Positions 1,451 through 34,559 of a DNA stretch of 38,344 nucleotides are shown here, piece by piece. Origin of the DNA: Macrostomum lignano (taxonomy: Eukaryota). The stretch is taken from assembly GCA_002269645.1 (NCBI GenBank), contig NIVC01002049.1, positions 1 to 38,344 on the forward strand. Direction: 5' to 3'. Each line of letters opens with the position of its first letter. The first letter of the stretch is position 1. The translations under genes and the position numbers were made by a program. The notes beneath the pieces are model-generated. The model saw only the letters and a program-made list of their open reading frames with translations. It ran no database searches and had not been told where the DNA came from.

Positions 1451-2313
1451 ATGGCAGCTGCATCCGCATCCAAAGCACCTAATGAACGGCTCTACTACAA
1501 ACTTTACGAAGCCTGTGGAAAAGGTGATTATAGTAGAGTTCGAGGCTACCTTAGCGAGGGCTTGTCACCCGGCTGGATCAACAAAAATGATCGCAACAGG
1601 AGCCTACTGATGGCTGCCGCGGCTTCAACCAATGGCGAAAATGTAAACATCTGCCGGCTGCTGACTGAACTGAAGTCTCCGCTGGACCATCGCGACAGCT
1701 CGGGGCTCGGCGCGTTGCACATCTGCGCCAGGCAGAATTTATTTAGCGTCGCTAAACTACTGTTGAACGCTGGCGCCAATGTGAACTTGTTGGCTAAGAA
1801 TGACGTCACCGCATTGATGATCTGCGTCGATTTTGGTCACATCGAACTAGCAAAACTGCTGCTGGACCAGAGGAACATCCAGTTGAACCAGCAGAGTAGC
1901 CAGCAAGGATTCACCGCTCTGATGAAGTCGGTGTTTGAGAACAGCGTCCAGCTGGCTTGCCTGCTCATCGATCGTGGCGCCAGGCTTGACCTGGCCTCAA
2001 AGAGCGGCTTCACCGCGTTGCACCTTTGCGCCCAGCTGGACAGACGCGAGATTGCTAAGCGCATTCTGGCTAAAGCGCCACATGAACTGGTCAATCGGAC
2101 AGCCAGGCCAGAGTTCAAGAGTAGCACAGCGTTTGCTTTAGCTGCTCTGAATGGTCACGTTGAGATGCTGCGACTGCTGCACGCGAGCGGCGCTGATCCA
2201 AATCTGGTAAATAGCGAGGGTTGCACAGCTTTGGACCAAGTGAAAATGGCAGGCGTGCCGGCTTCGCCTGAACTGCTCAGCCTGTTGAAGAGCTGGAGAG
2301 TTGTTGGCGGGAG
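1451..2313 (+). CDS. Exon 1: ankyrin-repeat block (~8 repeats)
   Basis: Ankyrin motifs GLGALHICARQN, DVTALMICVDFGH, GFTALHLCAQLD, STAFALAALNGHVEMLRLL. Ends at a consensus GTGAGT donor. Confidence 0.9.
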
Positions 2314-5300
2314 GTGAGTCAATCATCAAGGAGCCTCCTGATGAAAAGAATACGGAAGGGGCAAAAGGCCCTGGTGGAGTTCACTAGGAAGTGTAAAAAC
2401 TTAAATCTAAAAACAAGCAGCACGACCTCATTTACACCTTTTACCGCCACAAATAGGCAAAAGCGATCCAAGCAACTCAGCCTCATCAAAGCGATCCGAA
2501 GCGACAGGCTCGACCGAGTTCGAAACATCCTGCTGAACGATGGCGAAGGCGTCAATCAGGCGATCGCGATGGACCGGACAACGGGTCAGACACCGCTGAT
2601 GCTTGCAGCTGGATTGGATAAACCGGAAGCGCTAAAACTGCTTCTAGAAGCAATCAGAAGAGATCGCAGCAGTAACGCCAGTTTGCACGTCAATCTTCGG
2701 TCGACGAATTCCAGCCAGACGACCGCCCTGCACGCGGCAGTCCAAGCCGGGAGCGAGGCCTGCGTCAGCCAGCTGCTGCACGCCGGCGCCAAGCTGTCCA
2801 TAAGAGACGCCTGGGGTTCGACGCCGCTTCATTTCTGCGCAGATTTCGACTCGGCAAGGCCGTTGGTCAAGTTGCTTGTCAGCCGGGCAGGCTTCAACAA
2901 GTTGATGAACAGCGGCGGCGGCGGCCGCAACGGCAGTCCGCTCTGCCCGGTCAAGCTCGCAGCTGTCCGCGGTCATCTCGACGTCCTGAGGCCAATGCTA
3001 AGACGGCTTCTGCAGTTGGACGCTCAATGGGCCGGCAACGAATGGCTGCCGCAGATCTGCGACGAGGCCAAACGGGCACGTCAGTTAGACGCGGTTAACG
3101 TCGTGTTGGAGCTCATGTGAGACTGTATACAGGCTAGCGCGGTGGAGTTGTTAGTTGCAATGGTTCAGCTCTGACTCTGGCTAGTTTTAACCATAGACTC
3201 TAGCTTTAACCATAGAACATAGTTTTACCATAGACCCAAGTTTTAATCATAGACCCTAGTTTTAACCATAGACCCTAGTTTTAATCATAGACCATAGTTT
3301 TACCATAGAACCTAGTTTTAATCATAGACCATAGTTTTACCATAGACCCTAGTTTTAATCATAGACCCTAGTTTTAACCATAGACCCTAGTTTTAATCAT
3401 AGACCATAGTTTTACCATAGAACCTAGTTTTAATCATAGACCCTAGTTTTAACCATAGACCCTAGTTTTAATCATAGACCATAGTTTTACCATAGAACCC
3501 AGTTTTAACCCTACCTTATTGCTTAGTCATATAGACCGTAGTTTTAATCATAGAACCTTGTGAAGCTTGTGTTTCGTTTTGTTTTGAGCTTGTGAAAGCA
3601 ATTTCACAAGCTGCTAAAATGGTTTCGAGGTTGTGAAATTTCGAGCTTGTGAAATTTCGAGCTTATGAAAGTAACTGGTTTCGAGGTTGTGAAATTTCGA
3701 GCTTTTGAAGTCGGCTGCTAAAATTTTCGAGGTTGTCAAATTTCGAGCTTGTGAAGCGACCCCGTTTAAAAAATAGAACTTAAATATTTTGAACCACCAA
3801 CTAGAGCCTGCTGAAATGAAAAGACTTTATATACTACTGTACAAAGACCTTGACCAAGATGCTGAAATACCCATCTTATCCCAAAAAACCACCATTTACT
3901 CGAATCTATTTCAAACAGGTCAAAATCGACGCAAAACACCGACGAGCTGACCATATCGAAGGTTTTCAAAGCTGCAATGGACGGCAATACGAGAAAGGTG
4001 CGCTACTTGCTCGAGTCCAGCGGCGGCGCCCTACAGCGACGCATCAACGAGCGGATTAGGCAGGACCCGGGCTGGACCGTCCTGATGGCGGCCACCTGGA
4101 ACGATGACGAGGCCACCTGCAGGCTGCTGCTGGATCGAGGCGCGGATCCCAACGTCGCGCAGCAGGATCTGGGCGTCACGGCGTTGCACATCGCGGTGCA
4201 GCAGGACAGCCGCCGAGTCGCTAAGATCCTACTGGACCAGACATCCATTGACATCAACGCCAAGAGCTCCGACAGCCGGACTCCGTTGATTCGAGCCGCC
4301 TGGTTGAATCGTCGGGCTATCGCCATACTTCTGCTGGATAGAAGGGCCAGCGTCAACAACCAGGAGGCAGATGGATTTAGCGCTTTGCACTTTTGCGCCC
4401 AGGAGAATCTTCAAGAGCTTGCCGAACTGTTGATTAAACGCAACGCCAATTTAGAGCTGGAGACAAGCTCTAGAAAAAACCGCAACACTGCGTTTACCCT
4501 AGCGGCCGTCAAGGGCCATGCGGACATGCTGAAACTGCTGGCTAACTACGGGGCCAGTATCTACCACAGAAGCTCCCAAGGCGACGCAATGGAACTTGCT
4601 ATGCGGGCAAATCGGACAGCCGCAACTGAGGTGCTGCTGCAGCTCGATAGCCAGAAGCGTCGTACCTGGGCAGCCCATGCAGCTCCAACAAGGTTTGGAC
4701 TTTAAAATGTGTCTTCAAAATTAATAAGTTGAAAAATTATTGTGACCGTGCCATTGAGTGTAGTACAACACTAGTAAACTTGAGCCTTCTAAGGATGGAA
4801 GACTGCTAAGCAGAGTTGTGTTTGTGCAGAAGTTTTGATAGTTGACATGTGGAAATCTTTAATTAATGCATGGTGTTTTCTATGCTGAACGAAGGTAATG
4901 GCCCTAGCTCGTATAGAAATGAGGCTTTTAAAGTCGTTTACTATTGCTTAATAAACTTCTACTACCTACTCCAGTAGACCAGCGCGCAGAGGACGCAGGC
5001 TTGATTTCGATTTCGGAGGTACTCATTCAGGCCGTTTTGAACTATTCGAACCGGACTATTCGAGCCAGAACTCAAGTGTGGTGCCACCGATACGCGGCTA
5101 TCAGTACACGATGCGCAGCAAGCCTCGCGGGATCTGCCTCATTATCAACAACGAGAAGTTTGTCGACGACTCTCAAACTCGCACTGGCTCGCAGCAGGAT
5201 GTTAATCGTCTGGAGAGCCTGTTCAGAGAGACGCTAAATTTTGAAGTACAGGTGCACAGAGACAATAACGCCAACGAACTTCTGGCTCTGGTTCGGAAAC

Positions 5301-5860
5301 TCGCCACCAGCGATCGTCACACAAAATTTGACTGCTTTGTGGCCTTTATCATGTCGCACGGCAAATACGATAAAGTGTTGGGCTCAGATGGCAACTATGT
5401 CGAGCTGGATGACGTCATAAGCCCGTTCTACGACTGCAGATCGCTCCAGAATAAGCCGAAGCTGTTCTTTATCCAGGGATGTCGAATAATCGAAGGCTCA
5501 AGGAGTTCCTCCGGCAGTCAAAGTTCTGTGCAGCTACTCCGTAGCTCCCAATACGGCAGGGTCAGTTCAAGCAAAATGGACTTTCTCATCGCGTACGCTG
5601 TCACCAAGGGTGATAAGGCAATCCGGATCACAGATAAAGGCAGCCCGTACATTCAAACCCTGTGCAATGTGATCAGAAGGAACTACGAAAGGAGCCATCT
5701 GTGCGCCATGCTAAATATGGTCAGACACGAGCTGGGCAGGCGTCCGTTTTTTGCCTACGGTCCGGAATTCGAACCAATATTTAACTTGCCCTCTGAGATT
5801 AACCAACTGAGAGGTGACGTCTGGTTTAAGGATTCTTTTCGATACCAGTCAATTGACTAG
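1451..5860 (+). CDS. Ankyrin-repeat caspase, spliced model join(1451..2313,2457..3116,3919..4692,4975..5860), predicted 1060 aa
   Basis: Donors AG|GTGAGT (2313/2314), AT|GTGAGA (3116/3117), AAG|GTTTGG (4692/4693). Acceptors ...CCACAAATAG| (2456), ...TTTCAAACAG| (3918), ...CCTACTCCAG| (4974). All introns are phase 2 and the joins keep frame (863+660+774+886=3183 nt). The ank3 and caspase frames are open upstream of their track starts back to these acceptors. Confidence 0.75.
2457..3116 (+). CDS. Exon 2: ankyrin-repeat block (~5-6 repeats)
   Basis: GQTPLMLAAG, TTALHAAVQAG, GSTPLHFCAD, VKLAAVRGHLDVL. The track ORF start at 2314 (GTG) is the intron donor; 2314-2456 is AT-richer with a pyrimidine tract before the AG. 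Confidence 0.85.
3184..3515. repeat. ~18-19 bp minisatellite (TTTTAAYCATAGACCCTAG)n in intron 2
   Basis: About 17 tandem copies read directly. Confidence 0.9.
3555..3756. repeat. Degenerate 16-bp repeat cluster (TTTCGAGCTTGTGAAA) in intron 2
   Basis: Several TTTCGAG(C/G)TTGTGAAA copies, some interrupted. Confidence 0.8.
3919..4692 (+). CDS. Exon 3: ankyrin-repeat block (~7 repeats)
   Basis: Frame is open from the 3918 acceptor (SKSTQNTDELTISKVFKAAMDGNTRKVRYLL), completing an ankyrin helix that the ATG at 3977 would cut. Motifs GVTALHIAVQ, RTPLIRAAW, GFSALHFCAQ, NTAFTLAAVKGHADMLKLL. Confidence 0.85.
4975..5860 (+). CDS. Exon 4: caspase (peptidase C14A) domain, caspase-8-like in sequence
   Basis: YTMRSKPRGICLIINN, RTGSQQD (S1 Arg), FIMSHG (catalytic His), KPKLFFIQGCR (catalytic Cys), small subunit DFLIAY...R...GSPYIQTLC. 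Frame open from 4955 with no upstream ATG, so a splice at 4974 is needed. Confidence 0.95.
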
Positions 5861-6861
5861 TCTAGCTATTGATTATAGGAGTGTGCAGCGTCTTTTTAAG
5901 AGCATTGTAGTTGTCCATGAGTTTAACTGCCACATTATATTGACATTTTAGCCTGAAAAAAACAAAAAAATGTAGCTTAGGCTTAACGCACAACTGCCCA
6001 CCAGAAACGTTTAAAATAAAAAATCTTGTCCAGTGGCCAGATTTTCAGGCTTGCAATATGGCGTTTTACGCAATTCGCTATGTAAATTCATTGTTAATCA
6101 GCAACTGGGACCCCACAAGTACTGTAAAGATATTTATAATTCAATTGTAAAATGGGTGCCAGCAACAGCTTGGGTTAGTGAGGGTGTGTGGCGACCACAT
6201 CAGTCCCTTGGACTGAAAACTTCCTAATTAAAATTAATTTGTTTCTCCCTAACAGAGGGTCTTTCATTGGGATATCCTTCGGGATTGCTAGCACATTTTG
6301 ATTAGCTAGCTATTTTTTATTTAATGTGAATTCCTTGTTTTTACTTTCAATCTTTTCAGATTTTTACAAATTTCACACTGTTTTCAAATTTTCTAGTTGT
6401 TACTAATTAGCTAGCATGATAATTTCGGTTTTCGATAACGTCCCCTTATATAGCCTCATTTTCGAGTTGTAACAAAATTTTGTCTAAAGTCGATGAATTA
6501 TGTCAATGCCTTAAAATATCTTAAAGTCGTTTAAATCGTTGATTGAAAAAATTCACTGATTGCTATAGATGCGTATTTCTGTTGTTAATTCCATCGAATG
6601 TGTTGTGGTCTATTTACTGTAAAAATTGTATTCGTCTTATATTTAGCTACGGCTATGCGAGCTATATTTATTATTGTAAAGTTAAAACTCAATGCTCAAT
6701 TATGCTCAATTATTGGCTAATATATCTGACTGGATCGATGGTCTCCCCCGTTTTTACTTACCGAGACAAATCCCTGTTTACTAACGGTCATGTTTATCTA
6801 CATGTAGCTAGCTATAATAAACAATTGGCACTTTGGCTGATTTTTTTACTTTTGTGCGGTT

Positions 6862-7647: not shown

Positions 7648-9225
7648 TCACCCGATGTTGAATACTAGAAGTCGCTTATTATTGCGATCAGCTACCATCA
7701 GCTGGTCGCGCGTGCCTCCTGTCAGCACCGCTAGACCGCATGGACAGCAGAATTTGCCGTCTCCGCTGCCGCTCTCGCCCGGCACTCCTAGGGTCTGCAG
7801 CAGTGAGCCGCTTTCAGCGTCCACCACTCGCACTGAGTGACTGCGGAATTCGCTGACGAACAGGCGGCCTCTGCTGTCGACGACCACATCGTACGGATAA
7901 GTAAACTGAGCCATGCCGCTAGCACCCTTAATCGGAAAGGATGTCACGAGCTGTCTGTTTTCAATGGACACTCGGTGCACCATGTTGTGATGCTTGTCAG
8001 CCACAAGAATGCAGTCATGCAGGCATGTCATGTTGTACAAGTCTGCGTCGGGGAATTCCCTCAGCGTAATGATGAACTGGAATTCGAATCGCAACTTGTC
8101 GAATGCAGCAATCTTGTTGCCGCTGGATACAAACACGAAGGCTGCGTTGCCGCCGATGCCCCAGACGTCTCCAAAGTTGTTCACGTCTGTCTTAATTTGA
8201 AAACGAATCCGACCGCTCAGGTCTGCTACAGTCACTACATCTGGCTGAGCGATGAACAACTGCTGACGGTCGCAGTGCAGACCCCAGACAAGCTTTCTCC
8301 AATTAATCGGACAATAGCATCGGAAACACCGCGAACTATGCATCGAAAAGACAAACAAATACTCTTTGTCAGACAGGACTGCAAACACACACTGTTGGGA
8401 CAGAGCTTCACTACCAAAATCAGCTGACTCGGCGGGTACAATGCGACCTGAACGGTTAGCAACGAATCCGCTGGTGTCGCTGCACACGTCCAGCCAGTGC
8501 ACCCAGCCGTCTGGCTCCACTATATGAGTAATTATAATCGAACCAGTCGATTTATTAATCTCATGCCTCTTTGAATCTGTGGTAGGATAATAGTTTTTTC
8601 TCAGTGGCACCACTGCGGATTCAGAGTCACTCGAAGTGTCCGTCGCAACGTCTATCAACTCGGCGCCAGCTAGCGCGTTGCCAACCAGTCGCTTGAGCTG
8701 CCGAAGGCGTCGCAACTGCAGCTCGGCGCCGTCGGCCTTCGAACGCAGTCGCTTCGCAACTTCAAAGTCCGACTTCAAATCTGGAAGCGACAGCTGCATG
8801 GATTCGGCCAGCTGAACCACCTCGGCAATGCTGTCCGCCTTCTCCGCTGCGGCCACCTCCTCGGTGTAGCTGCAGACATCCTCGAGGTTCCGCTGGCAAA
8901 CGTGAACAGCCTCAAGGCGCTTCCGATACTGCTCCGCCAATCGGGTACAGTACTCTTGCACGTCTCGCTGTACAGAGGCGAGCGTCAGCTGAACCTCCAG
9001 CAGGTGTTTTTCAAGTTCGTCAGATTCCACCGCCAAGTCATTAGCGACATCTTGCGAGTAGGCGTCGAGTTCATCAGCAACAGACTGTTGCAGCTTGTAG
9101 GCGTCCGCTAAATCAATTTTGAGGTGATGATCGCACAGTTGGCAGCGAGAGAACGGACCCAAGCCTAGAGCCGGTTCGCCGCAGATGACGCACAGCTCAG
9201 TGTCAGAAGAGGTTTCCGAATTCAT
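7648..9225 (-). CDS. TRIM-NHL-like protein (B-box-like Zn finger, coiled coil, NHL beta-propeller)
   Basis: First ATG at 9225-9223. N-terminal CVIC-x12-CQLCDHH, then a helical heptad region. C-terminal NHL repeats FTYPYDVVVDSRGRLFVSE and FCCPCGLAV...LMVADRNNKRL. No RING within this ORF; no intron evident. Confidence 0.8.
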   Translation of the reverse strand: MNSETSSDTELCVICGEPALGLGPFSRCQLCDHHLKIDLADAYKLQQSVADELDAYSQDVANDLAVESDELEKHLLEVQLTLASVQRDVQEYCTRLAEQYRKRLEAVHVCQRNLEDVCSYTEEVAAAEKADSIAEVVQLAESMQLSLPDLKSDFEVAKRLRSKADGAELQLRRLRQLKRLVGNALAGAELIDVATDTSSDSESAVVPLRKNYYPTTDSKRHEINKSTGSIIITHIVEPDGWVHWLDVCSDTSGFVANRSGRIVPAESADFGSEALSQQCVFAVLSDKEYLFVFSMHSSRCFRCYCPINWRKLVWGLHCDRQQLFIAQPDVVTVADLSGRIRFQIKTDVNNFGDVWGIGGNAAFVFVSSGNKIAAFDKLRFEFQFIITLREFPDADLYNMTCLHDCILVADKHHNMVHRVSIENRQLVTSFPIKGASGMAQFTYPYDVVVDSRGRLFVSEFRSHSVRVVDAESGSLLQTLGVPGESGSGDGKFCCPCGLAVLTGGTRDQLMVADRNNKRLLVFNIG

Positions 9226-10197
9226 GATTCGCTGCTTCTTCTGGTAGCTTTTCAAGTGGCAATTTGTGTCAGTTTATTTCATGATTGACTTTATACTAAC
9301 TGCAAGCATTGCACTGGCCTTGATGCTGTTCGTGCAGCCAAATGTGACTAAATTTTGCCACCCCGAGGTACAATTTTAGATGCTTTCGGTCGACCGCGCA
9401 TGGAGTATGTGTAAACTAAAGGATTAATATGCGCCGGATGAATTCAGCTTGAATTTGTTTGACATGTACGCTGCTTTGCGGTTAGACAAACTTGCAAAAG
9501 AGAACTACAGTGAAAAGAAGTATTAAACATTTAATATAGTATGCGATATGCTTACCCTTCTAGTTTTGAATAAAACTGACGCCATCACAACGCCATGTAG
9601 TGAAACCAATTTTGTGGCTTATACTCAGAACGGGGCTGAAGACATCTCAAAGAATGAAAGGACTACTATAATTGCAATTTATATCAAATTTAAATGGTTG
9701 TATAGGCAAGTAGACAAGTCAGGCACTAGATCATTAACAAAAATGTATTTATTAAATTCGATAAAAATATCTTCATACGCGATAAAAATAGATGAGCATC
9801 AATATGTGTAAAAAACAGATACTGAAAACGACGCACTGGGAATGCAATACAATGCACTTGCAAGATCAAGGCGAAAGTGTCAATAACACAAGCTGATGAA
9901 ATTCATACACGTATTCGTGTTTATCTTAGTGTTTTGAAAAAACGAACTAATTACGAGTATCAAAACTGGTGTTAAATTTAATAATTAAGGGTATATTGCG
10001 GTATCAGAGCTACACTGAGTCCAACGGAAGCAGCTCGACCCGACATCGCATATATACACGTAATGCGTATTTATGATAGCTATATAAATACGTCTCGTAT
10101 TTCATTATTAAAAAACAAATAAACTATGAGCTTGCAGCACTATCTAAAAATTCTCTATAAAAAATTGTCATACGCTCGTATAAAGTAATTACTTTTT

Positions 10198-12162
10198 CTA
10201 AATCTTGATCAACACAGTACCGCGTATGTAGGCTGTGCAAATGGGGCAGCTGGTCACAGAGTTGGCACAAGGAGAGCAAATGTTTAAATGACCACAGTCC
10301 AGAAGCATGACGTTCACCTCATTGTCCATGCACACCTTGCACGTCTTCCAGTCGATTGTGTCTCGGTGTCTCGGCTGTTGGTTCAGTGACTCCCGAATCT
10401 GAGACATCCTGCTCTCGAAGAACGCCTCCGGATCCTGCGACTGCTTGCGCATGCGGCGGCTCTCGGAGAGCATGAAGTCGAGGAACAGCTCCGATGTTGC
10501 AAAGTCATCGCCTCGCTGTCTGAGATGCAGCTCTGTGAACAGTTTCACTTGCAGAGCAGAAAATCCGAGCTGAGTGAGCAGTCTCAAAACGGGCAGGTCG
10601 GCTCTGGCATTGATGTCTTTGGCCTCGACTCTGAACTCGACTCCAGGTGTGACTGCGAGAGACTGGTCTACGCGACTGCTGCGGACTGCAGTAGGGGCAA
10701 CGGACTCGTCGACAGTCGCAAAACTAGCTGATACAGTTGAGCCCGACTGCACCAGTGCAGTGCGACGCCGAGCTGAGGCAGCACAAGTCGGGTGCTGCAC
10801 GGGAGGTGACAGTCGGTGCACTGTCCGCACAAAGTCGCTGCCTCGTTCCAACAACACATGAGGACAGCGAGGCGACCATCTAGCGTGCTCAATCCACACA
10901 TCATCGCTGCAGCTCCAGTCGTTAACGCGAAGTCCACAGCTGAAGCAGCAGGTCGCTCTCTCGGCTTTCGAGTAGAAGAAGCCCGCCTTTGCAAGCAAGT
11001 ACACTGGCTGCTGAACGAAAGCCGAGTGCAGAGACTGCGACCTCGTTTGGTAGCTCTCGAAATCTGCGTGTTTGGCAGTCACACTCGATGGCTCACTTTC
11101 AAGACTGTGCTGGAGAGCAGACAGTTCCCTGAGCGCTCTCTCGGAGCACGCAGATCTCGCTACCTCGCTCGACACTGGTAGCTGAGGATGCTTTATCAGG
11201 TCGACTGCGACCAGCTCGTCATCAACAACGCGTACTGCACCAGCAGAGGTTGGACTACAAAGTCCTCGTGTCGCCAGCGCCCACTCTTTCAGCCCAGCGG
11301 CCTCAATCGGTGGAAGCTCAGCGACCAGCTTCATGCTCCAGTCTCCGTTCACCATCACTACGGCTTCATCTATGATCTGATCACTGCACTGCACTGCCTC
11401 GACCAGCTTTGCTGACCTCGAGGCTCCTTCCGGCTCCCTGTGCTCTCGAGGCACGTTGCCGACCTCGACGAATAGCACAAACGGACAGGTGGAGAAGTGG
11501 CGTCTGTGAGCCTCTCGGACCTGTTCGCCAGCCTTCCAGCCCTTGAGCACACCCTTGCAGAATGCACACTTGACTCTGTCCGTCTCCTGGAGGTAGAAGA
11601 ATCCGTCAGCAGCCAGATCCGTCACTGACACCAGGTGAGCCGCTGTAAAGCTGGCATCTGGCAGATGGAAAGACTGCCACCTGTTCTCTTCTCGTCTCAT
11701 GTCGCACAGTTGTTGGGGAATCGAGGCCGGTATTCCACTCGTGTCCCATCGCTGATTGCGGAAGTCCAGAGTCTGCGGCACAGGCGATACTCTGCCGTCA
11801 GATGTGCTTCTGCTGTTGCAGTAGTGCAACTTCTTGCACTTGCCAGTCTGTGATCGAGAACTAAAAGACTTTAACTGTTCGGGCTGAGTGTCAGAGTGCA
11901 AGACCCTCTGCCTGGACAATCCGTCAGTTGCAATTGCTAATAATGGATTAAATAACAGTTGAAATTCTGTGGCGTCAGTGTTACGCCAGGTTCTCGCAGA
12001 ATTTTGACCGGATTGAAATCTGGTTGATGCGCATGGAGCGTCACTTGCCGGACAAGTTTGATCGATGCGTTCAAGCCTTTGATCCGGTTCCGATGAAGAG
12101 GACGACTGATATGTAGCTTGCCAGGCATTCAATCTAACAAATCTATACCTGTTATTAGCCAT
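10198..12162 (-). CDS. Inhibitor of apoptosis (IAP): two BIR domains, UBA-like segment, C-terminal RING
   Basis: BIR1 CAFC-x16-H-x6-C and BIR2 CFSC-x16-H-x6-C (LAKAGFFY...DW...EHARWSPRC). RING CKVCMDNEVNVMLLDCGHLNICSPCANSVTSCPIC. The N-terminal ~90 aa could hide an intron (CAG|GTATAG near 12148). Confidence 0.95.
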   Translation of the reverse strand: MANNRYRFVRLNAWQATYQSSSSSEPDQRLERIDQTCPASDAPCASTRFQSGQNSARTWRNTDATEFQLLFNPLLAIATDGLSRQRVLHSDTQPEQLKSFSSRSQTGKCKKLHYCNSRSTSDGRVSPVPQTLDFRNQRWDTSGIPASIPQQLCDMRREENRWQSFHLPDASFTAAHLVSVTDLAADGFFYLQETDRVKCAFCKGVLKGWKAGEQVREAHRRHFSTCPFVLFVEVGNVPREHREPEGASRSAKLVEAVQCSDQIIDEAVVMVNGDWSMKLVAELPPIEAAGLKEWALATRGLCSPTSAGAVRVVDDELVAVDLIKHPQLPVSSEVARSACSERALRELSALQHSLESEPSSVTAKHADFESYQTRSQSLHSAFVQQPVYLLAKAGFFYSKAERATCCFSCGLRVNDWSCSDDVWIEHARWSPRCPHVLLERGSDFVRTVHRLSPPVQHPTCAASARRRTALVQSGSTVSASFATVDESVAPTAVRSSRVDQSLAVTPGVEFRVEAKDINARADLPVLRLLTQLGFSALQVKLFTELHLRQRGDDFATSELFLDFMLSESRRMRKQSQDPEAFFESRMSQIRESLNQQPRHRDTIDWKTCKVCMDNEVNVMLLDCGHLNICSPCANSVTSCPICTAYIRGTVLIKI

Positions 12163-14917: not shown

Positions 14918-16180
14918 ATAGATTGGAGGGCGATTTTCATGAGAGTATATTTATAGACTGGAGGGCGATTCTCATGAGAGTATATTTATAGACTGGAGGG
15001 CGATTCTCATGAGAGTATATTTATAGACTGGAGGGCGATTCTCATGAGAGTATATTTATAGACTGGAGGGCGATTCTCATGAGAGTATATTTATAGACTG
15101 GAGGGCGATTCTCATGAGAGTATATTTATAGACTGGAGGGCGTTTTCTCATGAGAGTATATTTATAGACTGGAGGGCGATTCTCATGAGAGTATATTTAT
15201 AGATTGGAGGGCGATTCTCATGAGAGTATATTTATAGACTGGAGGGCGATTCTCATGAGAGTATATTTATAGACTGGAGGGCGATTCTCATGAGAGTATA
15301 TTTATAGACTGGAGGGCGATTCTCATGAGAGTATATTTATAGACTGGAGGGCGTTTTCTCATGAGAGTATATTTATAGACTGGAGGGCGATTCTCATGAG
15401 AGTATATTTATAGATTGGAGGGCGATTCTCATGAGAGTATATTTATAGACTGGAGGGCGATTCTCATGAGAGTGGATTTATAGACTGGAGGGCGATTCTC
15501 ATGAGAGTATATTTATAGACTGGAGGGCGATTCTCATGAGAGTATATTTATAGACTGGAGGGCGATTCTCATGAGAGTATATTTATAGACTGGAGGGCGA
15601 TTCTCATGAGAGTATATTTATAGACTGGAGGGCGTTTTCTCATGAGAGTATATTTATAGACTGGAGGGCGATTCTCATGAGAGTATATTTATAGATTGGA
15701 GGGCGATTCTCATGAGAGTATATTTATAGACTGGAGGGCGATTCTCATGAGAGTATATTTATAGACTGGAGGGCGATTCTCATGAGAGTATATTTATAGA
15801 TTGGAGGGCGATTCTCATGAGAGTATATTTATAGACTGGAGGGCGATTCTCATGAGAGTAGACTCAGATTGGAGGGCGATTCTCATGAGAGAAGACTTAT
15901 AGATTGGAGGGCGATTCTCATGAGAGTGGATTTATATATTGGAGGGCGATTCTCATGAGAGTAGACTCATAGATTGGAGGGCGATTCTCATGAGAGTAGA
16001 CTCATAGATTGGAGGGCGATTCTCATGAGAGTAGACTCATAGATTGGAGGGCGATTCTCATGAGAGTAGACTCATAGATTGGAGGGCGATTCTCATGAGA
16101 GTAGACTCATAGATTGGAGGGCGATTCTCATGAGAGTAGACTCATAGATTGGAGGGCGATTCTCATGAGAGTAGATTTAT
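14918..16180. repeat. 35-bp satellite, ~36 copies
   Basis: Unit ATAGACTGGAGGGCGATTCTCATGAGAGTATATTT, containing the palindrome TCTCATGAGA. No spacers. Confidence 0.98.
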
Positions 16181-23204: not shown

Positions 23205-24106
23205 TGCGTCTGGTCAAGCCAATCTGCACGAATCATTTTGAATATTCACAGACATTTTTTTATATTTTTTAGTCAAAAATACTGTTTTTGCTATCGTTCA
23301 CTATAGAAGTTCACTTCTGAACTTTCTTGCTAAACCATTTAAACTTGTAATTAAAAAATCGTTTGCTCTAGCGATTTGAGACCATGGACAACTGAAGTAG
23401 AAGGACTCTTGACTCTGTTTTCTAACAAATGAGCTGCAGATCGGAAAAGAAGGCATATTTGTCGTATCGCTAGTGCATTTAGTCTGCTCCAAGAACTACT
23501 CAAGAAAATAGGACTGGAACCTACATTTCTTAGAAATTTTTAGGAGGCCGGTTTTACCGGAAAAAAACATTACGGAGAATGGAGCTTTACATTTTCTCAG
23601 GACAAAAATTGTTGATTTTGATAGGAAGCAGGCGCAATGTTCATCTTATGTTATGGCTTGCCATTCCTATATTCCTATATTCACAGAGCTTTTTGTTTAG
23701 TAGCTACCGTCCTTTTACTTAAGTCGTTCGTGTGTGAGAAATTTAATTTTGACAATAATAATTATAGTTTCAAGTCAATGCTATTTTACATTGCAATAAA
23801 TCAACAAATTTATTTGCTTTTCACTGTTTTTGAAAACTAAACGCGTATCAAAATGTTTTTAATTTCTGCGTCTTGTGTAATAGCTTAAGGATGATATCAT
23901 AGTTTTAGTTTCAGCATCACCATAAGATTTTACTTTTGATGTCCAAAGTTACTACTGAATTTAGTTTTTAGGTTAATTGCGATGTGTTTTTATTAGTGCA
24001 ATACGAGTTAATTGCAGTTGAATTTCATTTTGAAGTTCTAAAAAAATTGAAACCAGAAGATTTGGTCAAAACTCAAGGACACTATCAAGTCAATACTTTG
24101 TCAGGA

Positions 24107-25457
24107 CAAATCAGTCAATGGTGACACAAGACACTGTCAAGCACAAATCAGTGAATGGTGACACAAGACACTGTCAGCACAAATCAGTCAATGGTGACAC
24201 AAGACACTGTCAGCACAAATCAGTCAATGGTGACACAAGACACTGTCAAGCACAAATCAGTCAATGGTGACACAAGACACTGTCAAGCACAAATCAGTGA
24301 ATGGTGACACAAGACACTGTCAGCACAAATCAGTCAATGGTGACACAAGACACTGTCAGCACAAATCAGTCAATGGTGACACAAGACACTGTCAAGCACA
24401 AATCAGTCAATGGTGACACAAGACACTGTCAAGCACAAATCAGTGAATGGTGACACAAGACACTGTCAGCACAAATCAGTCAATGGTGACACAAGACACT
24501 GTCAGCACAAATCAGTCAATGGTGACACAAGACACTGTCAAGCACAAATCAGTCAATGGTGACACAAGACACTGTCAGCACAAACCAGTGACCAATGTTG
24601 ACACAAGACACTGTCAGCACAAACCAGTGACAAATGGTCACACAAGACACTGTCAGCACAAACCAGTGACCAATGATGACACAAGACACTGTCAAGCACA
24701 AATCAGTCAATGGTGACACAAGACACTGTCAGCACAAATCAGTCAATGGTGACACAAGACACTGTCAGCACAAACCAGTGACCAATGTTGACACAAGACA
24801 CTGTCAGCACAAACCAGTGACAAATGGTCACACAAGACACTGTCAGCACAAACCAGTGACCAATGGTGACACAAGACACTGTCAGCACAAATCAGTCAAT
24901 GGTGACACAAGACACTGTCAGCACAAACCAGTGACCAATGTTGACACAAGACACTGTCAGCACAAATCAGTCAATGGTGACACAAGACACTGTCAAGCAC
25001 AAATCAGTCACTGGTGACACAAGACACTGTCAGCACAAATCAGTCAATGGTGACACAAGACACTGTCAGCACAAACCAGTGACAAATGATCACACAAGAC
25101 ACTGTCAGCACAAACCAGTGACAAATGGTCACACAAGACACTGTCAGCACAAACCAGTGACAAATGGTCACACAAGACACTGTCAGCACAAACCAGTGAC
25201 AAATGGTCACACAAGACACTGTCAGCACAAACCAGTGACAAATGGTCACACAAGACACTGTCAGCACAAACCAGTGACAAATGGTCACACAAGACACTGT
25301 CAGTACAAACCAGTGACAAATGGTCACACAAGACACTGTCAGCACAAATCAGTCAATGGTCACACAAGACACTGTCAGCACAAACCAGTGACAAATGGTC
25401 ACACAAGACACTGTCAGCACAAACCAGTGACCAATGGTGACACAAGACACTGTCAGC
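24107..25457. repeat. 36-40 bp minisatellite (AATGGTGACACAAGACACTGTCAGCACAAATCAGTC)n
   Basis: About 35 units with 36/37/39-bp variants; same family as 29596-31412. Confidence 0.97.
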
Positions 25458-25527
25458 ACCGAGACACAGTCAGTATTTGATGCCTGTCTAAAACCCAATT
25501 TATTGCATGATCCATCAATAGAAAGAA

Positions 25528-28500
25528 ATGTCCAGCACTGCAACTGCGACAGCATCAAACGCGCTGGCGGACGCCAAATTGTCCTCTTCGTTCGCTTGCA
25601 TCAACAGACGAACACCGGTGCGCGCCGCCTGGTCAGATACGCGCCATCGCGTGAAAACCGCGCCAAGCGAGAAGCCGGCTAATTATTTGGCAGGACTAGT
25701 GACGCCGAGTTTGCTGGTTGTGTCCGAGCCGGTTAGAAGGCATTGTGCCACAGCTTCGCTGCCTTTGAGGCACCAGCAGCACCAGCAGCAGCACCAGCAG
25801 CAGCAACTCGGAGAGGTGCCCACAAGTGAAGAATCTGCTCTGCCTAAGACGGCGGTAAGACAGGGTGATGGGAGCTACATGTAAGCATGTAATTTTTCTG
25901 GATCGCACGAATGGTTGTCCGGAAAGATTCTGCGGCAACTTGTCAGATCTAGCGACAGCGGATTCCATTATTTTTTTCCATCTGAAGAGCCATTCAAAGG
26001 GGTTGAGTTCATGACAGGGAAGATCATTTGGAAGACAAGATCTGATGCGATTGACAGGATTGGAATGTTCAAGAAATGAGGGAGAATTACGTTGTTACAG
26101 GTGATGGTTAAATGGTGTTTAAACATAAAAATTTTTTCCATGTGGAAAAACCGTTACCTTTTATTTTCGTTGACACTGTTACTGCAAGACTATGACAAAC
26201 TTTTAAATAGAATGACGTACGAGATTGATCGTATTTAATCCCAAGCTTCATTTCTCACTCTTCCAGCCTCCAGCTAGCCGGACTTTCCAGCTTGGCCCGG
26301 GCTTCCAGTTGACCCGTTCGCGAGACCGAGTCCTGGTAACCCTGGACTCCGATCAGCTGTTCACAGCCAGGCAACAGAAAGCCGAAACAGTGGCGAAGCA
26401 GAGCCGAACTGTTGAAGAGGCACAGCGCGATGCTTTAGTCGGTCAGATGCAGAAACACCTGGACTCTTTGGTTGTCATGCTAGAAGAAGAGCGACTCAAA
26501 CGTCGAGAAGAGATCGAAGCCCTAACGGCTGAGATGCAAGAAAAACTCGAGGCTCAGTCTCAGGCTCACGAGGGTCGGATCATTGACCTGCTGGCCCAGC
26601 ATCAGACTGCTGTGCAACAGGTCGAGAAGGAGAGACAGGAGCAGGTGAGAAGTTTTGTTGAGAATAAGAAAATGATAATGAGCTTGGGAGTTGGAATCTG
26701 AGTGGAGGGAGATTTGAATCTGAGTATGCGGTTTTTTACCTGAGTAGTAGGTAGCTTAAGATCTGGGTAGGGTAGCTTGGGATCTGGGTAGGGTAGCTTG
26801 GGATCTGGGTAGGGTAGCTTAGGATCTGAGTAGGGTAGCTTCGGATCTGGGTAGGGTAGCTTGGGATCTGAGTAGGGTAGCTTGGGATCTGAGTAGGCCG
26901 TAGCTTAAAATCTGAGTAGGGTAGCTTAGAATCTGAATAGGGTAGCTTAGAATCTGAGTAGGGTAGCTTGGGATCTGAGTCAGGGTAGCTTGGGATCTGA
27001 CTAGGAGGAACTTGGGATCTGAGTAGGGTAGCTTGGGATCTGAGTAGGGTAACGTGGGATCTGAGTAGGGGAACGTGGGATCTGAGTAGGGGAACGTGGG
27101 ATCTGAGTAGGGGAACGTGGGATCTTAGTAGGGGAACGTGGGATCTGAGTCGGTTAACTTGGTGTCTGAATATTGAACGAATACTTATGTTCACTAAACT
27201 AAAAGCTGATTAATAATTAATAAACCAGGCCCAAGAAGCCGAGACCAAGTACACCCTGATGCGCAAAGAACTGGAGAGTCAGATCGCCTACCTCAAGAGC
27301 AGTTTCGACACATTCAAAGACTCCTACACCAAAGATCTTGATGAAAAGTGGCGAAAGAAAGAAGCAGAGCTGATTGCTGAAGGCGAGGCCCGCGCCAAAC
27401 GACTGGTTGATGAGGCCACGAGTGAGTTGCTGAAAGAGCGCGAGGCTGAAGTCGAAGCGTTGAAAACTTCTCACAATTCTGAGCTGCAGAAATTGCAATT
27501 GGAGCACGAGAAGGAATTAAGCGAACTGCACAATCGCTACTCAGATATGGAGGGCACTGTTCAGCGATTGAACTCAGCGACTAGGGACTTGGTGGTGAGT
27601 GGGGCTGATTTAAATTAGTGCTTTTTTGTTTAAATTGGTAGTTGAAGTTCATAGCGTGACACTTTACGAGCTATTAACTTAGCATTGTTGCTTACTAAAC
27701 TGGTTTTAAATTGCTGTGTCACTAATGTCACTCCGATTGGTATTCCAGTGTCACTCCGTACTGTTACTCCAATTCAATTTCACTCCGTACTGTTACTCCA
27801 ATGTCACTTCATACTGGTACTCCAATGTCACTTCATACTGTTACTCCAATGTCACTTCATACTGGTACTCCAATGTCACTTCATACTGTTACTCCAATGT
27901 CACTTCATACTGTTACTCCAATGTCACTTCATACTGTTACTCCAATGTCACTTCATACTGGTACTCCAATGTCACTCCGTCTTGTGTTCCAACATCATTC
28001 TGTAGTGGTACTCCGATGTACTCCATACTGGTACTTCAGTGTCACTCTGTCCAGTACTTATTTGTTACCAATTCCTTCCACTCCATCTGGCACTTAAATG
28101 CCACGCTAATATCACTCAAATGTCACTCTGTCTCTGGTCACTGTCGTTGTCACTAACTTACTTACTACTGACGGGGGGCGCAGGCGCCGCGAATAGGTCC
28201 TATTGCAATCCCAAGGTAAAAGAGCACAAGGATTAACCCTGAGGGTGCGCCCAGTCCCCGCCAGTAGTCGGCAGGTTCGCAGTGGAGGCATCGGCGACCC
28301 TCATCCGGCCGGTATCCCGGACGAAGGCGCAAAGGTCACGGATGTTGTCTGGGGTGGTCAACTCGTTCATCCGCTGGGGGAGGCCGAGATATTTGTGCCG
28401 CGCCTTGTTGAAGTAAGGGCAGAAGGTGACGTGATGCTCCGCAGTCTCCTCTCCTATGCCACAGAAGGGACAGGTGGGAGGGCAACCGGTTTGCAACGAG

Positions 28501-31500
28501 ATATGTCTCTGGAAGGAACCATGGCCGGTTAGGACCATGCACAATTCCCTTAGGTTAGGTTAGGTTAAGTGATGTCAGATAACCAGATGCTTTCCTGTTC
28601 AGGTTAGGCATAGCAGAGCGGCTCTGTCTGTACTCGGTGCAGCTGTTCCAGTGAAGCTGGTGTTGCTGGCGGAGCCAACTGTTCATATGGCGGGATATTT
28701 GCGAACTAGGAATGGGTAGCCTCATCTGACGGTGGTTGTCGTCTGGGTTGCTTCCCTCCTTGCCGAGAAAGTCCGCGAGCTCGTTGCCCAGGATTTTGCT
28801 GTGACCGGGTGTCCAGATAATTCTAATCCTGTTAAGGACTGAGAGAGACTGCACACTGCTGTGGCATGGGGATACTGTAGCAGCGGAGATATTCTCAGTG
28901 GTTAAGGCCTTGATAGCGGCTTGGCTATCAGTGTAAAAATGAATATTGAAATTATTGATGTTCGCTTGGAGGTTTTGGGCGCACTACTCAATGATGCAAA
29001 TTTCGTTGTCACTTAACTAACTTTTTAAAGCTGCTTTTTTATCTTTAATTATATATCTAGCAGTGAAGGAACTATCAAATCTTGTACCCATTTGCACTTT
29101 ACCACACTAAAATTTAATATGAAATACTCGTAAATTCTACTTTAAGTAGTGTAGCACTTAACCAGTTTTATTTACTCGTAGTTTGACAATTAAGAAAAAT
29201 TTTAAAAAATCTGCACGCGTGACGCAACCACCAACACCAGTAACAGCGGAACCTGCAGTGACTCTAATCTCTGTTTGGACGTGCAACAAATAAATTGGTT
29301 TTAATAGCAATTTCAAATATTGATTTATCGATAATCTATTGGTATTTATCTGGTATAATGCCAATTATGATTTGTTTACTGTGTGAGTAACTTCCTGATT
29401 AGAGAGGATTTAAGTATTGTCAATTTTTCTCGGATGAAAATTTACTTTCTGTTACTTTCTTTTCTAACAATTTTATAGCAAATAATTTAGACGTGATGTT
29501 AATTGATTATTCTTACATCAGCCTTGATTTTATTTTTTAATCTTGTTCTTTATATATAGAATTGATTAAAAAATACCACTTGATTTTAGCTAAACATACA
29601 CAAGACACTGTCAGCACAAACCAGTGACCAATGGTGACACAAGACACTGTCAAGCACAAATCAGTCAATGGTGACACAAGACACTGTCAGCACAAATCAG
29701 TCAATGGTGACACAAGAAACTGTCAGCACAAATCAGTGACCAATGGTGACACAAGGCACTGTCAGCACAAATCAGTGACCAATGGTGACACAAGACACTG
29801 TCAGCACAAACCAGTGACCAATGGTGACACAAGACACTGTCAGCACAAACCAGTGACCAATGGTGACACAAGACACTGTCAGCACAAATCAGTCAATGGT
29901 GACACAAGACACTGTCAGCACAAACCAGTGACTAATGGTGACACAAGACACTGTCAGCACAAACCAGTGACCAATAATGACACAAGACACTGTCAGCACA
30001 AATCAGTGACCAATAATGACACAAGACACTGTCAGCACAAATCAGTGAATGGTGACACAAGACACTGTCAGCACAAACCAGTGACCAATGGTGACACAAG
30101 TCACTGTCAGCACAAATCAGTGACCAATGGTGACACAAGACACTGTCAGCACAAATCAGTCAATGGTGACACAAGACACTGTCAGCACAAATCAGTGACC
30201 AATGGTGACACAAGACACTGTCAGCACAAATCAGTGACCAATGGTGACACAAGACACTGTCAGCACAAATCAGTGACCAATGGTGACACAAGACACTGTC
30301 AGCACAAATCAGTGACCAATGGTGACACAAGACACTGTCAGCACTAATCAGTGACCAATGGTGACACAAGACACTGTCAGCACAAATCAGTCAATGGTGA
30401 CACAAGACACTGTCAGCACAAATCAGTCAATGGTGACACAAGACACTGTCAGCACAAATCAGTGACCAATGGTGACACAAGACACTGTCAAGCACAAATC
30501 AGTCAATGGTGACACAAGACACTGTCAGCACAAATCAGTGACCAATGGTGACACAAGACACTGTCAAGCACAAATCAGTGACCAATGGTGACACAAGACA
30601 CTGTCAGCACAAATCAGTGACCAATGGTGACACAAGACACTGTCAGCACTAATCAGTGACCAATGGTGACACAAGACACTGTCAGCACAAATCAGTCAAT
30701 GGTGACACAAGACACTGTCAGCACAAATCAGCCAATGGTGACACAAGACACTGTCAGCACAAATCAGTGACCAATGGTGACACAAGACACTGTCAGCACA
30801 AATCAGTGACCAATGGTGACACAAGACACTGTCAGCACAAATCAGTGACAATGGTGACACAAGACACTGTCAGCACAAATCAGTGACCAATGGTGACACA
30901 AGACACTGTCAGCACAATCAGTGACAATGGTGACACAAGACACTGTCAGCACAAATCAGTCAATGGTGACACAAGACACTGTCAGCACAAATCAGTCAAT
31001 GGTGACACAAGACACTGTCAGCACAAATCAGTCAATGGTGACACAAGACACTGTCAAGCACAAATCAGTCAATGGTGACACAAGACACTGTCAGCACAAA
31101 TCAGTGACCAATGGTGACACAAGACACTGTCAAGCACAAATCAGTGACCAATGGTGACACAAGACACTGTCAGCACAAATCAGTGACAATGGTGACACAA
31201 GACACTGTCAGCACAAATCAGTGACCAATGGTGACACAAGACACTGTCAGCACAAATCATCAATGGTGACACAAGACACTGTCAGCACAAATCATCAATG
31301 GTGACACAAGACACTGTCAGCACAAATCAGTCAATGGTGACACAAGACACTGTCAAGCACAAATCAGTCAATGGTGACACAAGACACTGTCAGCACAAAT
31401 CAGTGACCAATGCTGACAAAAGAAGTCTATAATTAATGTGTACAATGGTTACAAACACGCAATAAAATCTAATTTCTCAGGCCAAAGAAGAAAAGGTGAA

Positions 31501-34232: not shown

Positions 34233-34262
34233 AACAGACAGACAGACGACAGACAGACAGAC

Positions 34263-34305
<43 letters not shown>

Positions 34306-34328
34306 CAGACAGACAGACAGACAGACAG

Positions 34329-34360
<32 letters not shown>

Positions 34361-34402
34361 GCAGGCAGGCAGACAGACAGACAGACAGACAGACAGACAC
34401 TA

Positions 34403-34435
<33 letters not shown>

Positions 34436-34512: not shown

Positions 34513-34559
<47 letters not shown>

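What the first reader, a model, noticed from the sequence alone, without database searches (positions are those of the whole stretch)
1451..5860. Caspase with a ~20-ankyrin-repeat prodomain, hidden as four ORFs
Seen: three GT-AG introns join ank1, ank2, ank3 and the caspase ORF in frame into one 1060-aa protein. The caspase frame has no in-frame ATG before its acceptor, and the ank3 ATG would cut an ankyrin helix. The His-Cys dyad (SHG, QGCR) and S1 arginines are present. Established: animal initiator caspases use CARD or DED prodomains and are activated by dimerisation. RNase L is a precedent for an ankyrin domain that binds a ligand and dimerises an effector. Inference: this could be an adaptor-independent sensor-caspase whose ankyrin solenoid binds a ligand directly and triggers proteolysis. 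I do not recall this as a canonical animal caspase architecture but cannot confirm novelty.
Basis: partly seen in the sequence, partly recalled or inferred. Interest (0 to 1): 0.92.

Follow-up and report, generated by a model that had tools for sequence, protein, structure and literature searches.

The report
Flatworm caspase with ankyrin-repeat prodomain
This is a real four-exon gene of the free-living flatworm Macrostomum lignano encoding a cell-death protease (caspase) behind about 21 ankyrin repeats; this caspase type was already published for parasitic flatworms, so the find adds a member and corrects a published claim but is not a new kind of protein.

Summary
Joining 1451-2313, 2457-3116, 3919-4692 and 4975-5860 (+) through three GT-AG introns gives one open 1060-aa frame. 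It has 21 ankyrin repeats in three exon-sized blocks (8+6+7), a 40-residue disordered linker and a complete caspase domain. The window is Macrostomum lignano. UniProt A0A1I8I0Q1 uses the same three junctions but is wrongly extended to 2049 aa. A 59%-identical paralogue (BOX15_Mlig008053g1) comes from an RNA-seq-derived annotation. It has the same four exons and three phase-2 introns; one is at the identical aligned position, two within 2-4 columns.

The architecture is not new. 'ANK caspases' were described in platyhelminths (Horkan et al. 2024, citing Lee et al. 2014), though they were said to be absent from free-living flatworms. M. lignano has at least five Ank+caspase groups, plus kinase and Ras/Roc fusions. 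Ticks and a jellyfish also have Ank-caspases.

The ligand-sensor mechanism is untested speculation. My best reading is a long-prodomain zymogen whose ankyrin modules recruit partners for proximity-induced activation.

Verdict: a real, apparently functional gene and a new member of a known kind. Interest is moderate to low (0.35).

The parts
1451..2313 (+). Exon 1: start codon (CAGAAGATGG context, in-frame TAG 30 nt upstream) and ankyrin block 1 (repeats 1-8, residues 1-288)
   Evidence: This block is 67% identical to the paralogue's block 1, with dN/dS 0.17.
2314..2456 (+). Intron 1 (143 nt, GTGAGT...AG, phase 2)
   Evidence: The paralogue has a phase-2 intron 4 alignment columns away, in a gappy linker. 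The exact acceptor is the least certain of the three.
2457..3116 (+). Exon 2: ankyrin block 2 (repeats 9-14, residues 289-508)
   Evidence: It is 54% identical to the paralogue, with dN/dS 0.19.
3117..3918 (+). Intron 2 (802 nt, GTGAGA...AG, phase 2), containing a 19-bp minisatellite at 3181-3510
   Evidence: The paralogue's intron is at the identical alignment column and phase. The acceptor is the only in-frame one.
3919..4692 (+). Exon 3: ankyrin block 3 (repeats 15-21, residues 509-765), an internal duplicate of block 1
   Evidence: Blocks 1 and 3 are 38% identical over 188 aa, E 1e-23. It is 68% identical to the paralogue, with dN/dS 0.13.
4693..4974 (+). Intron 3 (282 nt, GTTTGG...AG, phase 2), with a NAGNAG acceptor at 4975/4978
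   Evidence: The paralogue's phase-2 intron lies 2 alignment columns away.
4975..5092 (+). Start of exon 4: disordered prodomain-caspase linker (residues 766-805), including FEPD793|Y (GAC 5054-5056), a candidate prodomain-removal site
   Evidence: pLDDT is 26-40 over residues 763-803. dN/dS is 0.54. An Asp aligns at the same place in the paralogue (AEMD|S). That cleavage happens here is an inference.
5093..5860 (+). Rest of exon 4: caspase (Peptidase_C14) domain with stop codon. Key residues are R835 (5180-5182), H894 (5357-5359), Q933/C935 (C at 5480-5482) and R983 (5624-5626). The intersubunit linker (residues 942-963) contains no Asp.
   Evidence: Pfam E 2.4e-44. PDB caspase-7 E 1e-27 with catalytic and S1 residues aligned. 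These residues are invariant in alignment A1. pLDDT is above 90, and TM to caspase-7 is 0.88-0.90. One search gives the residue positions and the Asp count.
6015..6020 (+). AATAAA, a candidate polyadenylation signal 155 nt after the stop
   Evidence: pattern position only; no evidence of function.

Best explanation
Shown: positions 1451-5860 (+) are a single four-exon gene of Macrostomum lignano. It encodes a 1060-aa long-prodomain caspase. The protein has three ankyrin modules (8+6+7 repeats, one per exon), a disordered 40-residue linker, and a caspase-3/7/8-like catalytic domain. The His-Cys dyad and the Asp-specific S1 pocket are intact. It belongs to a Macrostomum expansion of caspases fused to ankyrin, kinase or Ras/Roc modules, and it is of the published 'ANK caspase' kind.

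Inferred: it is made as an inactive zymogen. The ankyrin modules take the place of a DED or CARD domain as a protein-protein recruitment and clustering surface. Binding of an unknown partner brings caspase domains together, so they activate by induced proximity. The prodomain may then be removed at the conserved Asp in the linker (FEPD793|Y). Because the intersubunit linker has no Asp, activation of this copy probably does not need intersubunit cleavage. The active enzyme would cleave after Asp, either in downstream caspases or in substrates.

My confidence is about 0.9 for the gene and architecture, and about 0.4 for the activation mechanism.
For: Gene structure. The joined frame is open. Each donor is followed by a stop on read-through, and the caspase frame has no usable upstream ATG. 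The chosen splice sites are the best in-frame ones. The independent UniProt model P0123 (A0A1I8I0Q1) is identical over residues 1-1045.

Paralogue. P0001 (BOX15_Mlig008053g1) aligns collinearly at 59% identity. It has four exons and three phase-2 introns at the same or nearly the same columns. Its introns cannot be aligned to the window's, while its exons are 67-75% identical in DNA. The GenBank annotation it comes from was built from RNA-seq transcripts (PMC5730564).

Translated linker. NSSVVPPIRGYQY, upstream of the first ATG in the caspase frame, is identical in both paralogues. That region must therefore be translated as part of a longer protein.

Constraint. dN/dS is 0.09-0.19 in every ankyrin block and in the caspase domain, and 0.54 in the linker.

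Enzyme. Pfam C14 E 2.4e-44. Alignment to caspase-7 matches R, SHG, QxCR and R, and these residues are invariant in A1. The model has pLDDT above 90 and TM 0.9 to caspase-7.

Family context. Other M. lignano loci carry ankyrin repeats N-terminal to a caspase domain. The published interpretation of ANK caspases is as initiators.
Against: I found no transcript evidence for this locus itself. The RNA support is for the paralogue only. No partner, oligomeric state or cleavage site has been tested.

The catalytic domain scores best against effector caspase-7, so an initiator role is not implied by sequence. The active-site pentapeptide is QGCRI, not QACRG, with unknown effect.

The predicted interdomain arrangement is unreliable (pTM 0.46). 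I therefore cannot tell whether the ankyrin modules form one solenoid or touch the protease. My tree is a rough neighbour-joining tree with unsupported deep nodes.
Confidence: 0.6

Rival explanations
1. One reading: an adaptor-independent sensor caspase. The ankyrin region directly binds a small or macromolecular ligand, such as a pathogen or damage signal. Binding dimerises the protease, as 2-5A does for RNase L.
For: The ankyrin blocks are under purifying selection, and blocks 1 and 3 are better conserved than the protease between paralogues. The gene sits in a lineage-specific expansion of caspases fused to repeat or signalling modules: Ank, LRR, kinase and Ras/Roc. From general knowledge, that pattern is typical of immune sensor-effector families. 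Horkan et al. report that platyhelminths have lost FADD, the DED adaptor (PMC11463336).
Against: Nothing in the sequence identifies a ligand site. The ankyrin region matches only generic ankyrin proteins. RNase L dimerises through ankyrin plus pseudokinase domains, and this protein has no pseudokinase. Purifying rather than diversifying selection does not particularly favour a pathogen sensor.
Confidence: 0.15
2. The ankyrin prodomain is not an activation platform. Instead it acts as a cis-inhibitor, a tether or a substrate-selecting exosite. It would mask the protease or anchor it to a membrane or cytoskeletal partner, and the enzyme would act as an effector-type caspase once the linker is cut by another protease.
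For: The catalytic domain scores best against effector caspase-7 and starts with the caspase-3/7-like YQY(T/N)M motif. A disordered linker carries a conserved Asp. Designed ankyrin repeat proteins are known to bind and inhibit caspases (cited in PMC11463336). The best structural matches of the ankyrin region are the membrane-binding domains of ankyrin-R and ankyrin-B.
Against: In my tree the domain falls outside the caspase-3/6/7 group. The published tree places ANK caspases next to DED caspases. No contact between the ankyrin region and the protease could be assessed (pTM 0.46).
Confidence: 0.2
3. Gene-model artefact: an ankyrin-repeat gene and a short caspase gene (translated from M812, ATG 5111) are separate transcripts. 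They could, for example, be neighbours in a trans-spliced unit.
For: An in-frame ATG exists at 5111, just before the first beta-strand, and the Met is conserved in the paralogue. M. lignano uses SL trans-splicing widely: 38.8% of genes according to PMC5730564. I found no RNA data for this locus.
Against: The 13 residues upstream of that Met are identical between paralogues that are 59% identical overall. The frame stays open for 52 codons upstream without an ATG. The transcript-derived paralogue model joins the equivalent exons. Other independent M. lignano loci have the same ankyrin-then-caspase order.
Confidence: 0.04
4. An intact-looking but non-functional or decaying duplicate (pseudogene or pseudo-enzyme).
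For: The active-site motif is the unusual QGCR. The intersubunit linker has no Asp, unlike the paralogue's. The genome is highly redundant.
Against: The 3183-nt frame is open, and all catalytic and S1 residues are kept. dN/dS is 0.09-0.19.
Confidence: 0.03

Closest known systems
Platyhelminth 'ANK caspases' (Horkan et al. 2024, Genome Biol Evol, PMC11463336; first noted in Schistosoma by Lee et al. 2014, as cited there). Example found here: Cichlidogyrus casuarinus KAL3319427.1 (P0249)
   Same: An N-terminal ankyrin-repeat prodomain replaces DED or CARD, followed by a complete p20/p10 caspase domain. The host phylum is Platyhelminthes. No function has been shown experimentally.
   Different: The published clade is described as restricted to parasitic flatworms; this gene is from a free-living macrostomid. 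The prodomain is much longer: 21 repeats in three modules, against two Pfam Ank_2 stretches in the 799-aa P0249. In my rough tree the parasite sequences group with another M. lignano gene, Mlig019067 (bootstrap 80), not with this one.
M. lignano paralogue BOX15_Mlig008053g1 (P0001, 1067 aa)
   Same: It has the same three ankyrin blocks, linker and caspase, the same four-exon structure and the same intron phases. Identity is 59%.
   Different: It has the canonical QACR motif and two Asp residues in its intersubunit linker; the window gene has QGCR and none. There is no IAP or NHL gene within 10 kb of the paralogue.
M. lignano Ank+kinase+caspase (BOX15_Mlig018903, P0193) and Ras/Roc+caspase (Mlig000293/021837)
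   Same: They fall in the same weakly supported Macrostomum caspase clade (bootstrap 59). Each has an N-terminal signalling or repeat module in place of a death-fold domain.
   Different: They carry a protein kinase or small-GTPase domain that the window protein lacks. [quoted passage not shown]
Caspase-8 / DED caspases and caspase-7 (human structures, e.g. 1F1J, 4PS1)
   Same: The catalytic domain has the same fold (TM 0.86-0.90). The dyad and the S1 Arg/Gln/Arg residues are aligned. The long-prodomain layout resembles an initiator caspase.
   Different: There is no DED, CARD or other death-fold domain. There is no Asp in the intersubunit linker. The pentapeptide is QGCRI.
RNase L (a functional analogy only)
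   Same: Ankyrin repeats lie N-terminal to an effector enzyme that needs dimerisation.
   Different: The effector is different and there is no pseudokinase. No evidence of ligand binding exists, and the two are not homologous beyond generic ankyrin repeats.
Ank-caspases outside flatworms: tick Haemaphysalis longicornis XP_077551367 (Mind-bomb SH3 + Ank + RING + caspase) and jellyfish Sanderia malayensis (Ank + caspase, twice)
   Same: Ankyrin repeats lie N-terminal to a caspase domain.
   Different: They have other accessory domains and separate positions in the tree, so they are probably independent fusions.

Membership tests
Caspases (peptidase family C14A) | Caspase/hemoglobinase fold with p20 and p10 segments | tested here: met
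   Pfam PF00656 E 2.4e-44. The AF2 model has pLDDT above 90, and Foldseek TM to caspase-7 is 0.88-0.90.
Caspases (peptidase family C14A) | Catalytic His-Cys dyad in SHG and QxCxx motifs | tested here: met
   H894 and C935 align to the caspase-7 dyad. They are invariant in alignments A1 and A3. The motif is QGCRI, not QACRG.
Caspases (peptidase family C14A) | Asp-specific S1 pocket (Arg, Gln, Arg) | tested here: met
   R835, Q933 and R983 are aligned and conserved.
Caspases (peptidase family C14A) | Cleavage after Asp shown biochemically | not testable with these tools
   This needs recombinant enzyme and peptide substrates.
Platyhelminth ANK caspases (Horkan et al. 2024) | Ankyrin-repeat prodomain N-terminal to the caspase domain in one polypeptide | tested here: met
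   The paralogue's transcript-derived model has the same layout.
Platyhelminth ANK caspases (Horkan et al. 2024) | Membership of the monophyletic ANK-caspase clade that is sister to DED caspases | tested here: inconclusive
   In the NJ tree the window gene groups with other M. lignano fusions (bootstrap 59). The parasite ANK caspases group with Mlig019067 (bootstrap 80). The deeper nodes are unsupported.
Platyhelminth ANK caspases (Horkan et al. 2024) | Restricted to parasitic flatworms (as published) | tested here: not met
   The host is the free-living M. lignano. This failure reflects on the published criterion, not on the architecture.
Initiator caspases (functional class) | Death-fold prodomain (CARD or DED) that binds an adaptor | tested here: not met
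   No death-fold domain appears in Pfam.
Initiator caspases (functional class) | Monomeric zymogen activated by induced dimerisation on a platform | not testable with these tools
   This needs biochemistry.
RNase L-type ligand-gated ankyrin effectors | Ankyrin repeats that bind a defined small ligand, with a pseudokinase-mediated dimer | tested here: not met
   There is no kinase or pseudokinase domain. Ligand binding itself cannot be tested here.

The most novel reading that the evidence does not exclude
The 21-repeat, three-module ankyrin prodomain is itself the receptor. It would bind a microbial, viral or damage-derived ligand directly and cluster the protease without any adaptor. On that reading, the Macrostomum expansion of Ank-, kinase- and Ras/Roc-caspase fusions would be a family of one-polypeptide sensor-executioners. 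They would stand in for the DED/FADD pathway that Horkan et al. report as lost or partly lost in flatworms.
Probability: 0.12. Interest if true: 0.75.

Novelty: new member of a known kind. Interest (0 to 1): 0.35.

Why it matters
Nobody has characterised an ANK caspase experimentally. The only comparative study says they arose with parasitism and are absent from free-living flatworms.

This gene, its paralogue and at least three further Ank+caspase groups in M. lignano show that the architecture exists in an early-branching, free-living flatworm. One of those groups clusters with the parasite sequences. The 'parasitism' explanation therefore needs revising.

It also means the function can be studied in an animal for which transgenesis is published (PMC5730564) and, from my own knowledge, RNAi is established, instead of in schistosomes or tapeworms.

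On the practical side, the public UniProt model of this gene (A0A1I8I0Q1, 2049 aa) is wrong after residue 1045 and should be cut back to 1060 aa.

Tried and rejected
(1) A word-index search with the caspase domain alone found only two short unnamed proteins. I replaced it with the exhaustive HMMER scan.

I therefore could not check whether the GenBank Mlig_3_7 annotation contains this exact gene.

(3) The mixed ankyrin-plus-caspase alignment A2 was misaligned: the catalytic Cys column was 97 of 108 gaps. I discarded it and used A3 for the structure prediction.

(4) I tested whether the neighbouring IAP and NHL genes are also next to the paralogue. There was no tblastn hit in L001, which includes the 10 kb on each side of the paralogue, so I do not claim a conserved caspase-IAP gene pair.

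(5) The profile search for more ANK caspases returned caspase-8, -6, -3 and -2 and a cestode protein with a caspase domain only. No new Ank fusion appeared among the 120 proteins listed, of 407 found.

(6) The paper's supplementary tables are not held. I could not see which M. lignano accessions the authors used.

(7) The bacterial promoter/terminator scan is irrelevant to a eukaryotic gene, and I ignored it.

(8) I considered a bacterial origin, prompted by P0068, a secreted bacterial Ank protein with an orthocaspase. I rejected it because the catalytic domain is an animal caspase and the gene has spliceosomal introns.


Full report
**What is in the sequence.** The region holds four long + strand ORFs. 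Joining 1451-2313, 2457-3116, 3919-4692 and 4975-5860 gives a 3183-nt frame with no internal stop, encoding 1060 aa. The donors are GTGAGT, GTGAGA and GTTTGG, and every acceptor ends in AG.

Read-through past each donor meets a stop within 1, 1 and 4 codons. The caspase frame opens only at 4955 and has no ATG before 5111. The intron 2 acceptor is the only in-frame one, and acceptor 3 is a NAGNAG pair at 4975/4978.

Pfam on the joined protein finds ankyrin families over residues 1-780 (Ank_2 E 1.7e-74) and Peptidase_C14 at 817-1020 (E 2.4e-44).

**Whose gene it is.** An exhaustive HMMER scan with the caspase exon found P0123 as the top hit. This is UniProt A0A1I8I0Q1 from Macrostomum lignano, and it is identical to my model over residues 1-1045. 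The window is therefore M. lignano, a free-living macrostomid flatworm.

That public model is 2049 aa long. It leaves the caspase exon at a GT at 5814, 12 codons before the stop. It then strings together + strand ORFs that are antisense to the NHL and IAP genes (7837-8427 and 10816-11181), followed by distant coiled-coil exons. The paralogue ends ...GDVWFKDLENDQ, which matches read-through to the stop codon that ends at 5860. The true product is therefore 1060 aa.

**Independent support for the splicing.** The best database relative is P0001, BOX15_Mlig008053g1. It is 1067 aa, 59% identical over 99% of the model, and carries Ank plus PF00656. The alignment is collinear across all three junctions.

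I mapped P0001 back onto its contig, NIVC01000059.1 of GCA_002269645.1. This gives four exons and three GT-AG introns. All are phase 2, as in the window. Intron 2 is at the identical alignment column, and introns 1 and 3 lie within 2-4 columns in gappy linkers.

At the DNA level only the exons align, at 67-75% identity. Introns and flanks do not align.

The GenBank annotation of that assembly was built from a genome-guided RNA-seq transcriptome with TransDecoder ORFs (PMC5730564). The paralogue's Ank3-to-caspase join is therefore transcript-derived.

The 13 residues NSSVVPPIRGYQY lie upstream of the first ATG of the caspase frame and are identical in both paralogues. That is hard to explain unless they are translated as part of the long protein. 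I found no RNA evidence for the window locus itself.

**Anatomy.** By hand I count 21 repeat units, arranged 8+6+7, with each block confined to one exon and carrying its own capping repeats.

An AlphaFold2 model was built on an alignment of the two paralogues plus 64 caspases. Mean pLDDT is 76.7. It shows exactly 21 helix pairs between residues 10 and 762, a disordered linker at 763-803, and a caspase domain with pLDDT above 90. The one exception within the caspase domain is the intersubunit linker at 942-963. pTM is 0.46, so the mutual arrangement of the modules is not reliable.

Foldseek matches the protease to caspase-7, -3 and -8 with TM 0.82-0.90. It matches the repeats to the 24-repeat domains of ankyrin-R and ankyrin-B, but only locally (global TM about 0.3).

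Blocks 1 and 3 are internal duplicates: 38% identity over 188 aa, E 1e-23.

**Is it a working enzyme?** The best solved relatives by sequence are caspase-7 (E 1e-27), caspase-8 and caspase-3. R835, SH894G, Q933-x-C935-R and R983 align to the S1 pocket and the dyad. These residues are invariant across seven flatworm Ank-type caspases.

There are two peculiarities. The pentapeptide is QGCRI, not QACRG. The intersubunit linker contains no Asp, whereas the paralogue's has two.

An Asp in the prodomain linker (FEPD793|Y) aligns with AEMD|S in the paralogue. It is a candidate prodomain-removal site, but that is an inference.

Against the paralogue, dN/dS is 0.17, 0.19 and 0.13 for the three ankyrin blocks, 0.09 for the caspase and 0.54 for the linker. 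dS is near saturation, so the values are rough. Both halves are clearly constrained. Blocks 1 and 3 (67-68% identity) are better conserved than the protease (54%).

**What is already known.** Horkan et al. 2024 (PMC11463336) describe 'ANK caspases' as a maximally supported platyhelminth clade that is sister to DED caspases. They cite Lee et al. 2014 for the first sighting in Schistosoma, and they report one convergent case in the annelid A. virens. [quoted passage not shown] For M. lignano they report only a caspase with a kinase-like prodomain. They suggest the ANK caspases are initiators with an unidentified partner, and no experiments exist.

**What this window adds.** M. lignano has at least five Ank+C14 groups:
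- this gene;
- Mlig008053;
- Mlig001045 (about 650 aa);
- Mlig000705/009621 (about 700 aa);
- Mlig019067 (599 aa).

It also has Ank+kinase+C14 (Mlig018903), kinase+C14+Ank+C14, and Ras/Roc+C14 (Mlig000293/021837).

In a rough neighbour-joining tree, the window gene and Mlig008053 are sisters (bootstrap 100) within a weakly supported Macrostomum group (59). The monogenean and cestode sequences group with Mlig019067 (80). The claim that ANK caspases are parasite-restricted therefore looks wrong.

Ank-caspases also occur in a tick (Mind-bomb-like SH3 + Ank + RING + caspase) and in a jellyfish. This contradicts the statement that the feature is unseen in ecdysozoans.

**Mechanism.** Nothing here can test it. 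I favour a zymogen whose ankyrin modules serve as the recruitment and clustering surface in place of a death-fold domain, with proximity-induced activation and optional prodomain removal at D793.

A cis-inhibitory or tethering prodomain on an effector-like enzyme is a serious rival, because the domain scores best against caspase-7 and the ankyrin part resembles membrane-binding ankyrins. Separate genes or a pseudogene are unlikely.

**Verdict.** This is a real, apparently functional gene and a new member of a known kind. It is of moderate to low interest. Its main values are correcting a public gene model, correcting a published distribution claim, and offering a tractable organism in which to study ANK caspases.

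Noticed in passing
window 10198-12162 (-): A single-ORF 654-aa IAP-like protein with two BIR stretches (E 5e-27) and a C-terminal RING. It lies 4.3 kb downstream of the caspase and is convergent with it. No counterpart lies within 10 kb of the paralogue locus, so the adjacency may be chance.
   Followed up: partly
window 7648-9255 (-): A 535-aa ORF with an NHL repeat (Pfam E 1.8e-06) and, by my reading of the sequence only (not tested), a Cys-rich N-terminus. It lies between the caspase and the IAP gene.
   Followed up: partly
window 5814 onward; 7837-8427 (+), 10816-11181 (+), 31539-31910 (+): UniProt A0A1I8I0Q1 (2049 aa) over-extends the caspase gene. It skips the last 15 codons (from 5814) and the stop. 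It then runs through ORFs antisense to the NHL and IAP genes into a distant coiled-coil gene. The model should end at 5860.
   Followed up: yes
P0197 = BOX15_Mlig019067g1 (not in window): A 599-aa M. lignano Ank+caspase groups with monogenean and cestode caspases (NJ bootstrap 80). It is probably the free-living orthologue of the published parasite 'ANK caspase' clade, which contradicts the claim of parasite restriction.
   Followed up: partly
P0152/P0319 = BOX15_Mlig000293g2 / Mlig021837g1; P0193; P0255 (not in window): M. lignano also fuses caspases to Ras/Roc GTPase domains, to Ank+protein kinase, and to kinase+caspase+Ank+caspase. This domain vocabulary (Ank, Roc, kinase) recalls DAPK/ROCO proteins. 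That is my own comparison and I did not test it.
   Followed up: partly
P0218/P0257 (Haemaphysalis longicornis), P0126 (Sanderia malayensis), P0158 (unidentified): Ank-caspase fusions exist outside flatworms: a tick Mind-bomb-like SH3+Ank+RING+caspase and a jellyfish Ank+caspase tandem. There is also an LRR+caspase of unknown source.
   Followed up: partly
window 4970-4980: The last intron has a NAGNAG tandem acceptor (CCAG|TAG|ACC). Both choices are in frame and would differ by one serine.
   Followed up: yes
window 5474-5590: The active-site pentapeptide is QGCRI, not QACRG. The intersubunit linker is Ser-rich with no Asp, unlike the paralogue's (SNVD, SNFD). This suggests this copy is not matured by intersubunit cleavage after Asp.
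   Followed up: partly
window 3181-3510; 752-1023; 14918-16180; 24099-25459; 29598-31423; 34234-34609; 35107-37071; 37713-38274: The window is dense in satellites. There is a 19-bp minisatellite inside intron 2, and (ACAG)n/(TGTC)n tracts of up to 2 kb that produce long spurious ORFs. There are also 35-bp and 39-bp minisatellites of 1.3-1.8 kb.
   Followed up: no
window 26225-26701 (+), 31539-31910 (+): These are coiled-coil-like ORFs, probably exons of another + strand gene. One has a weak, sub-threshold FAM184 match (E 0.003).
   Followed up: no
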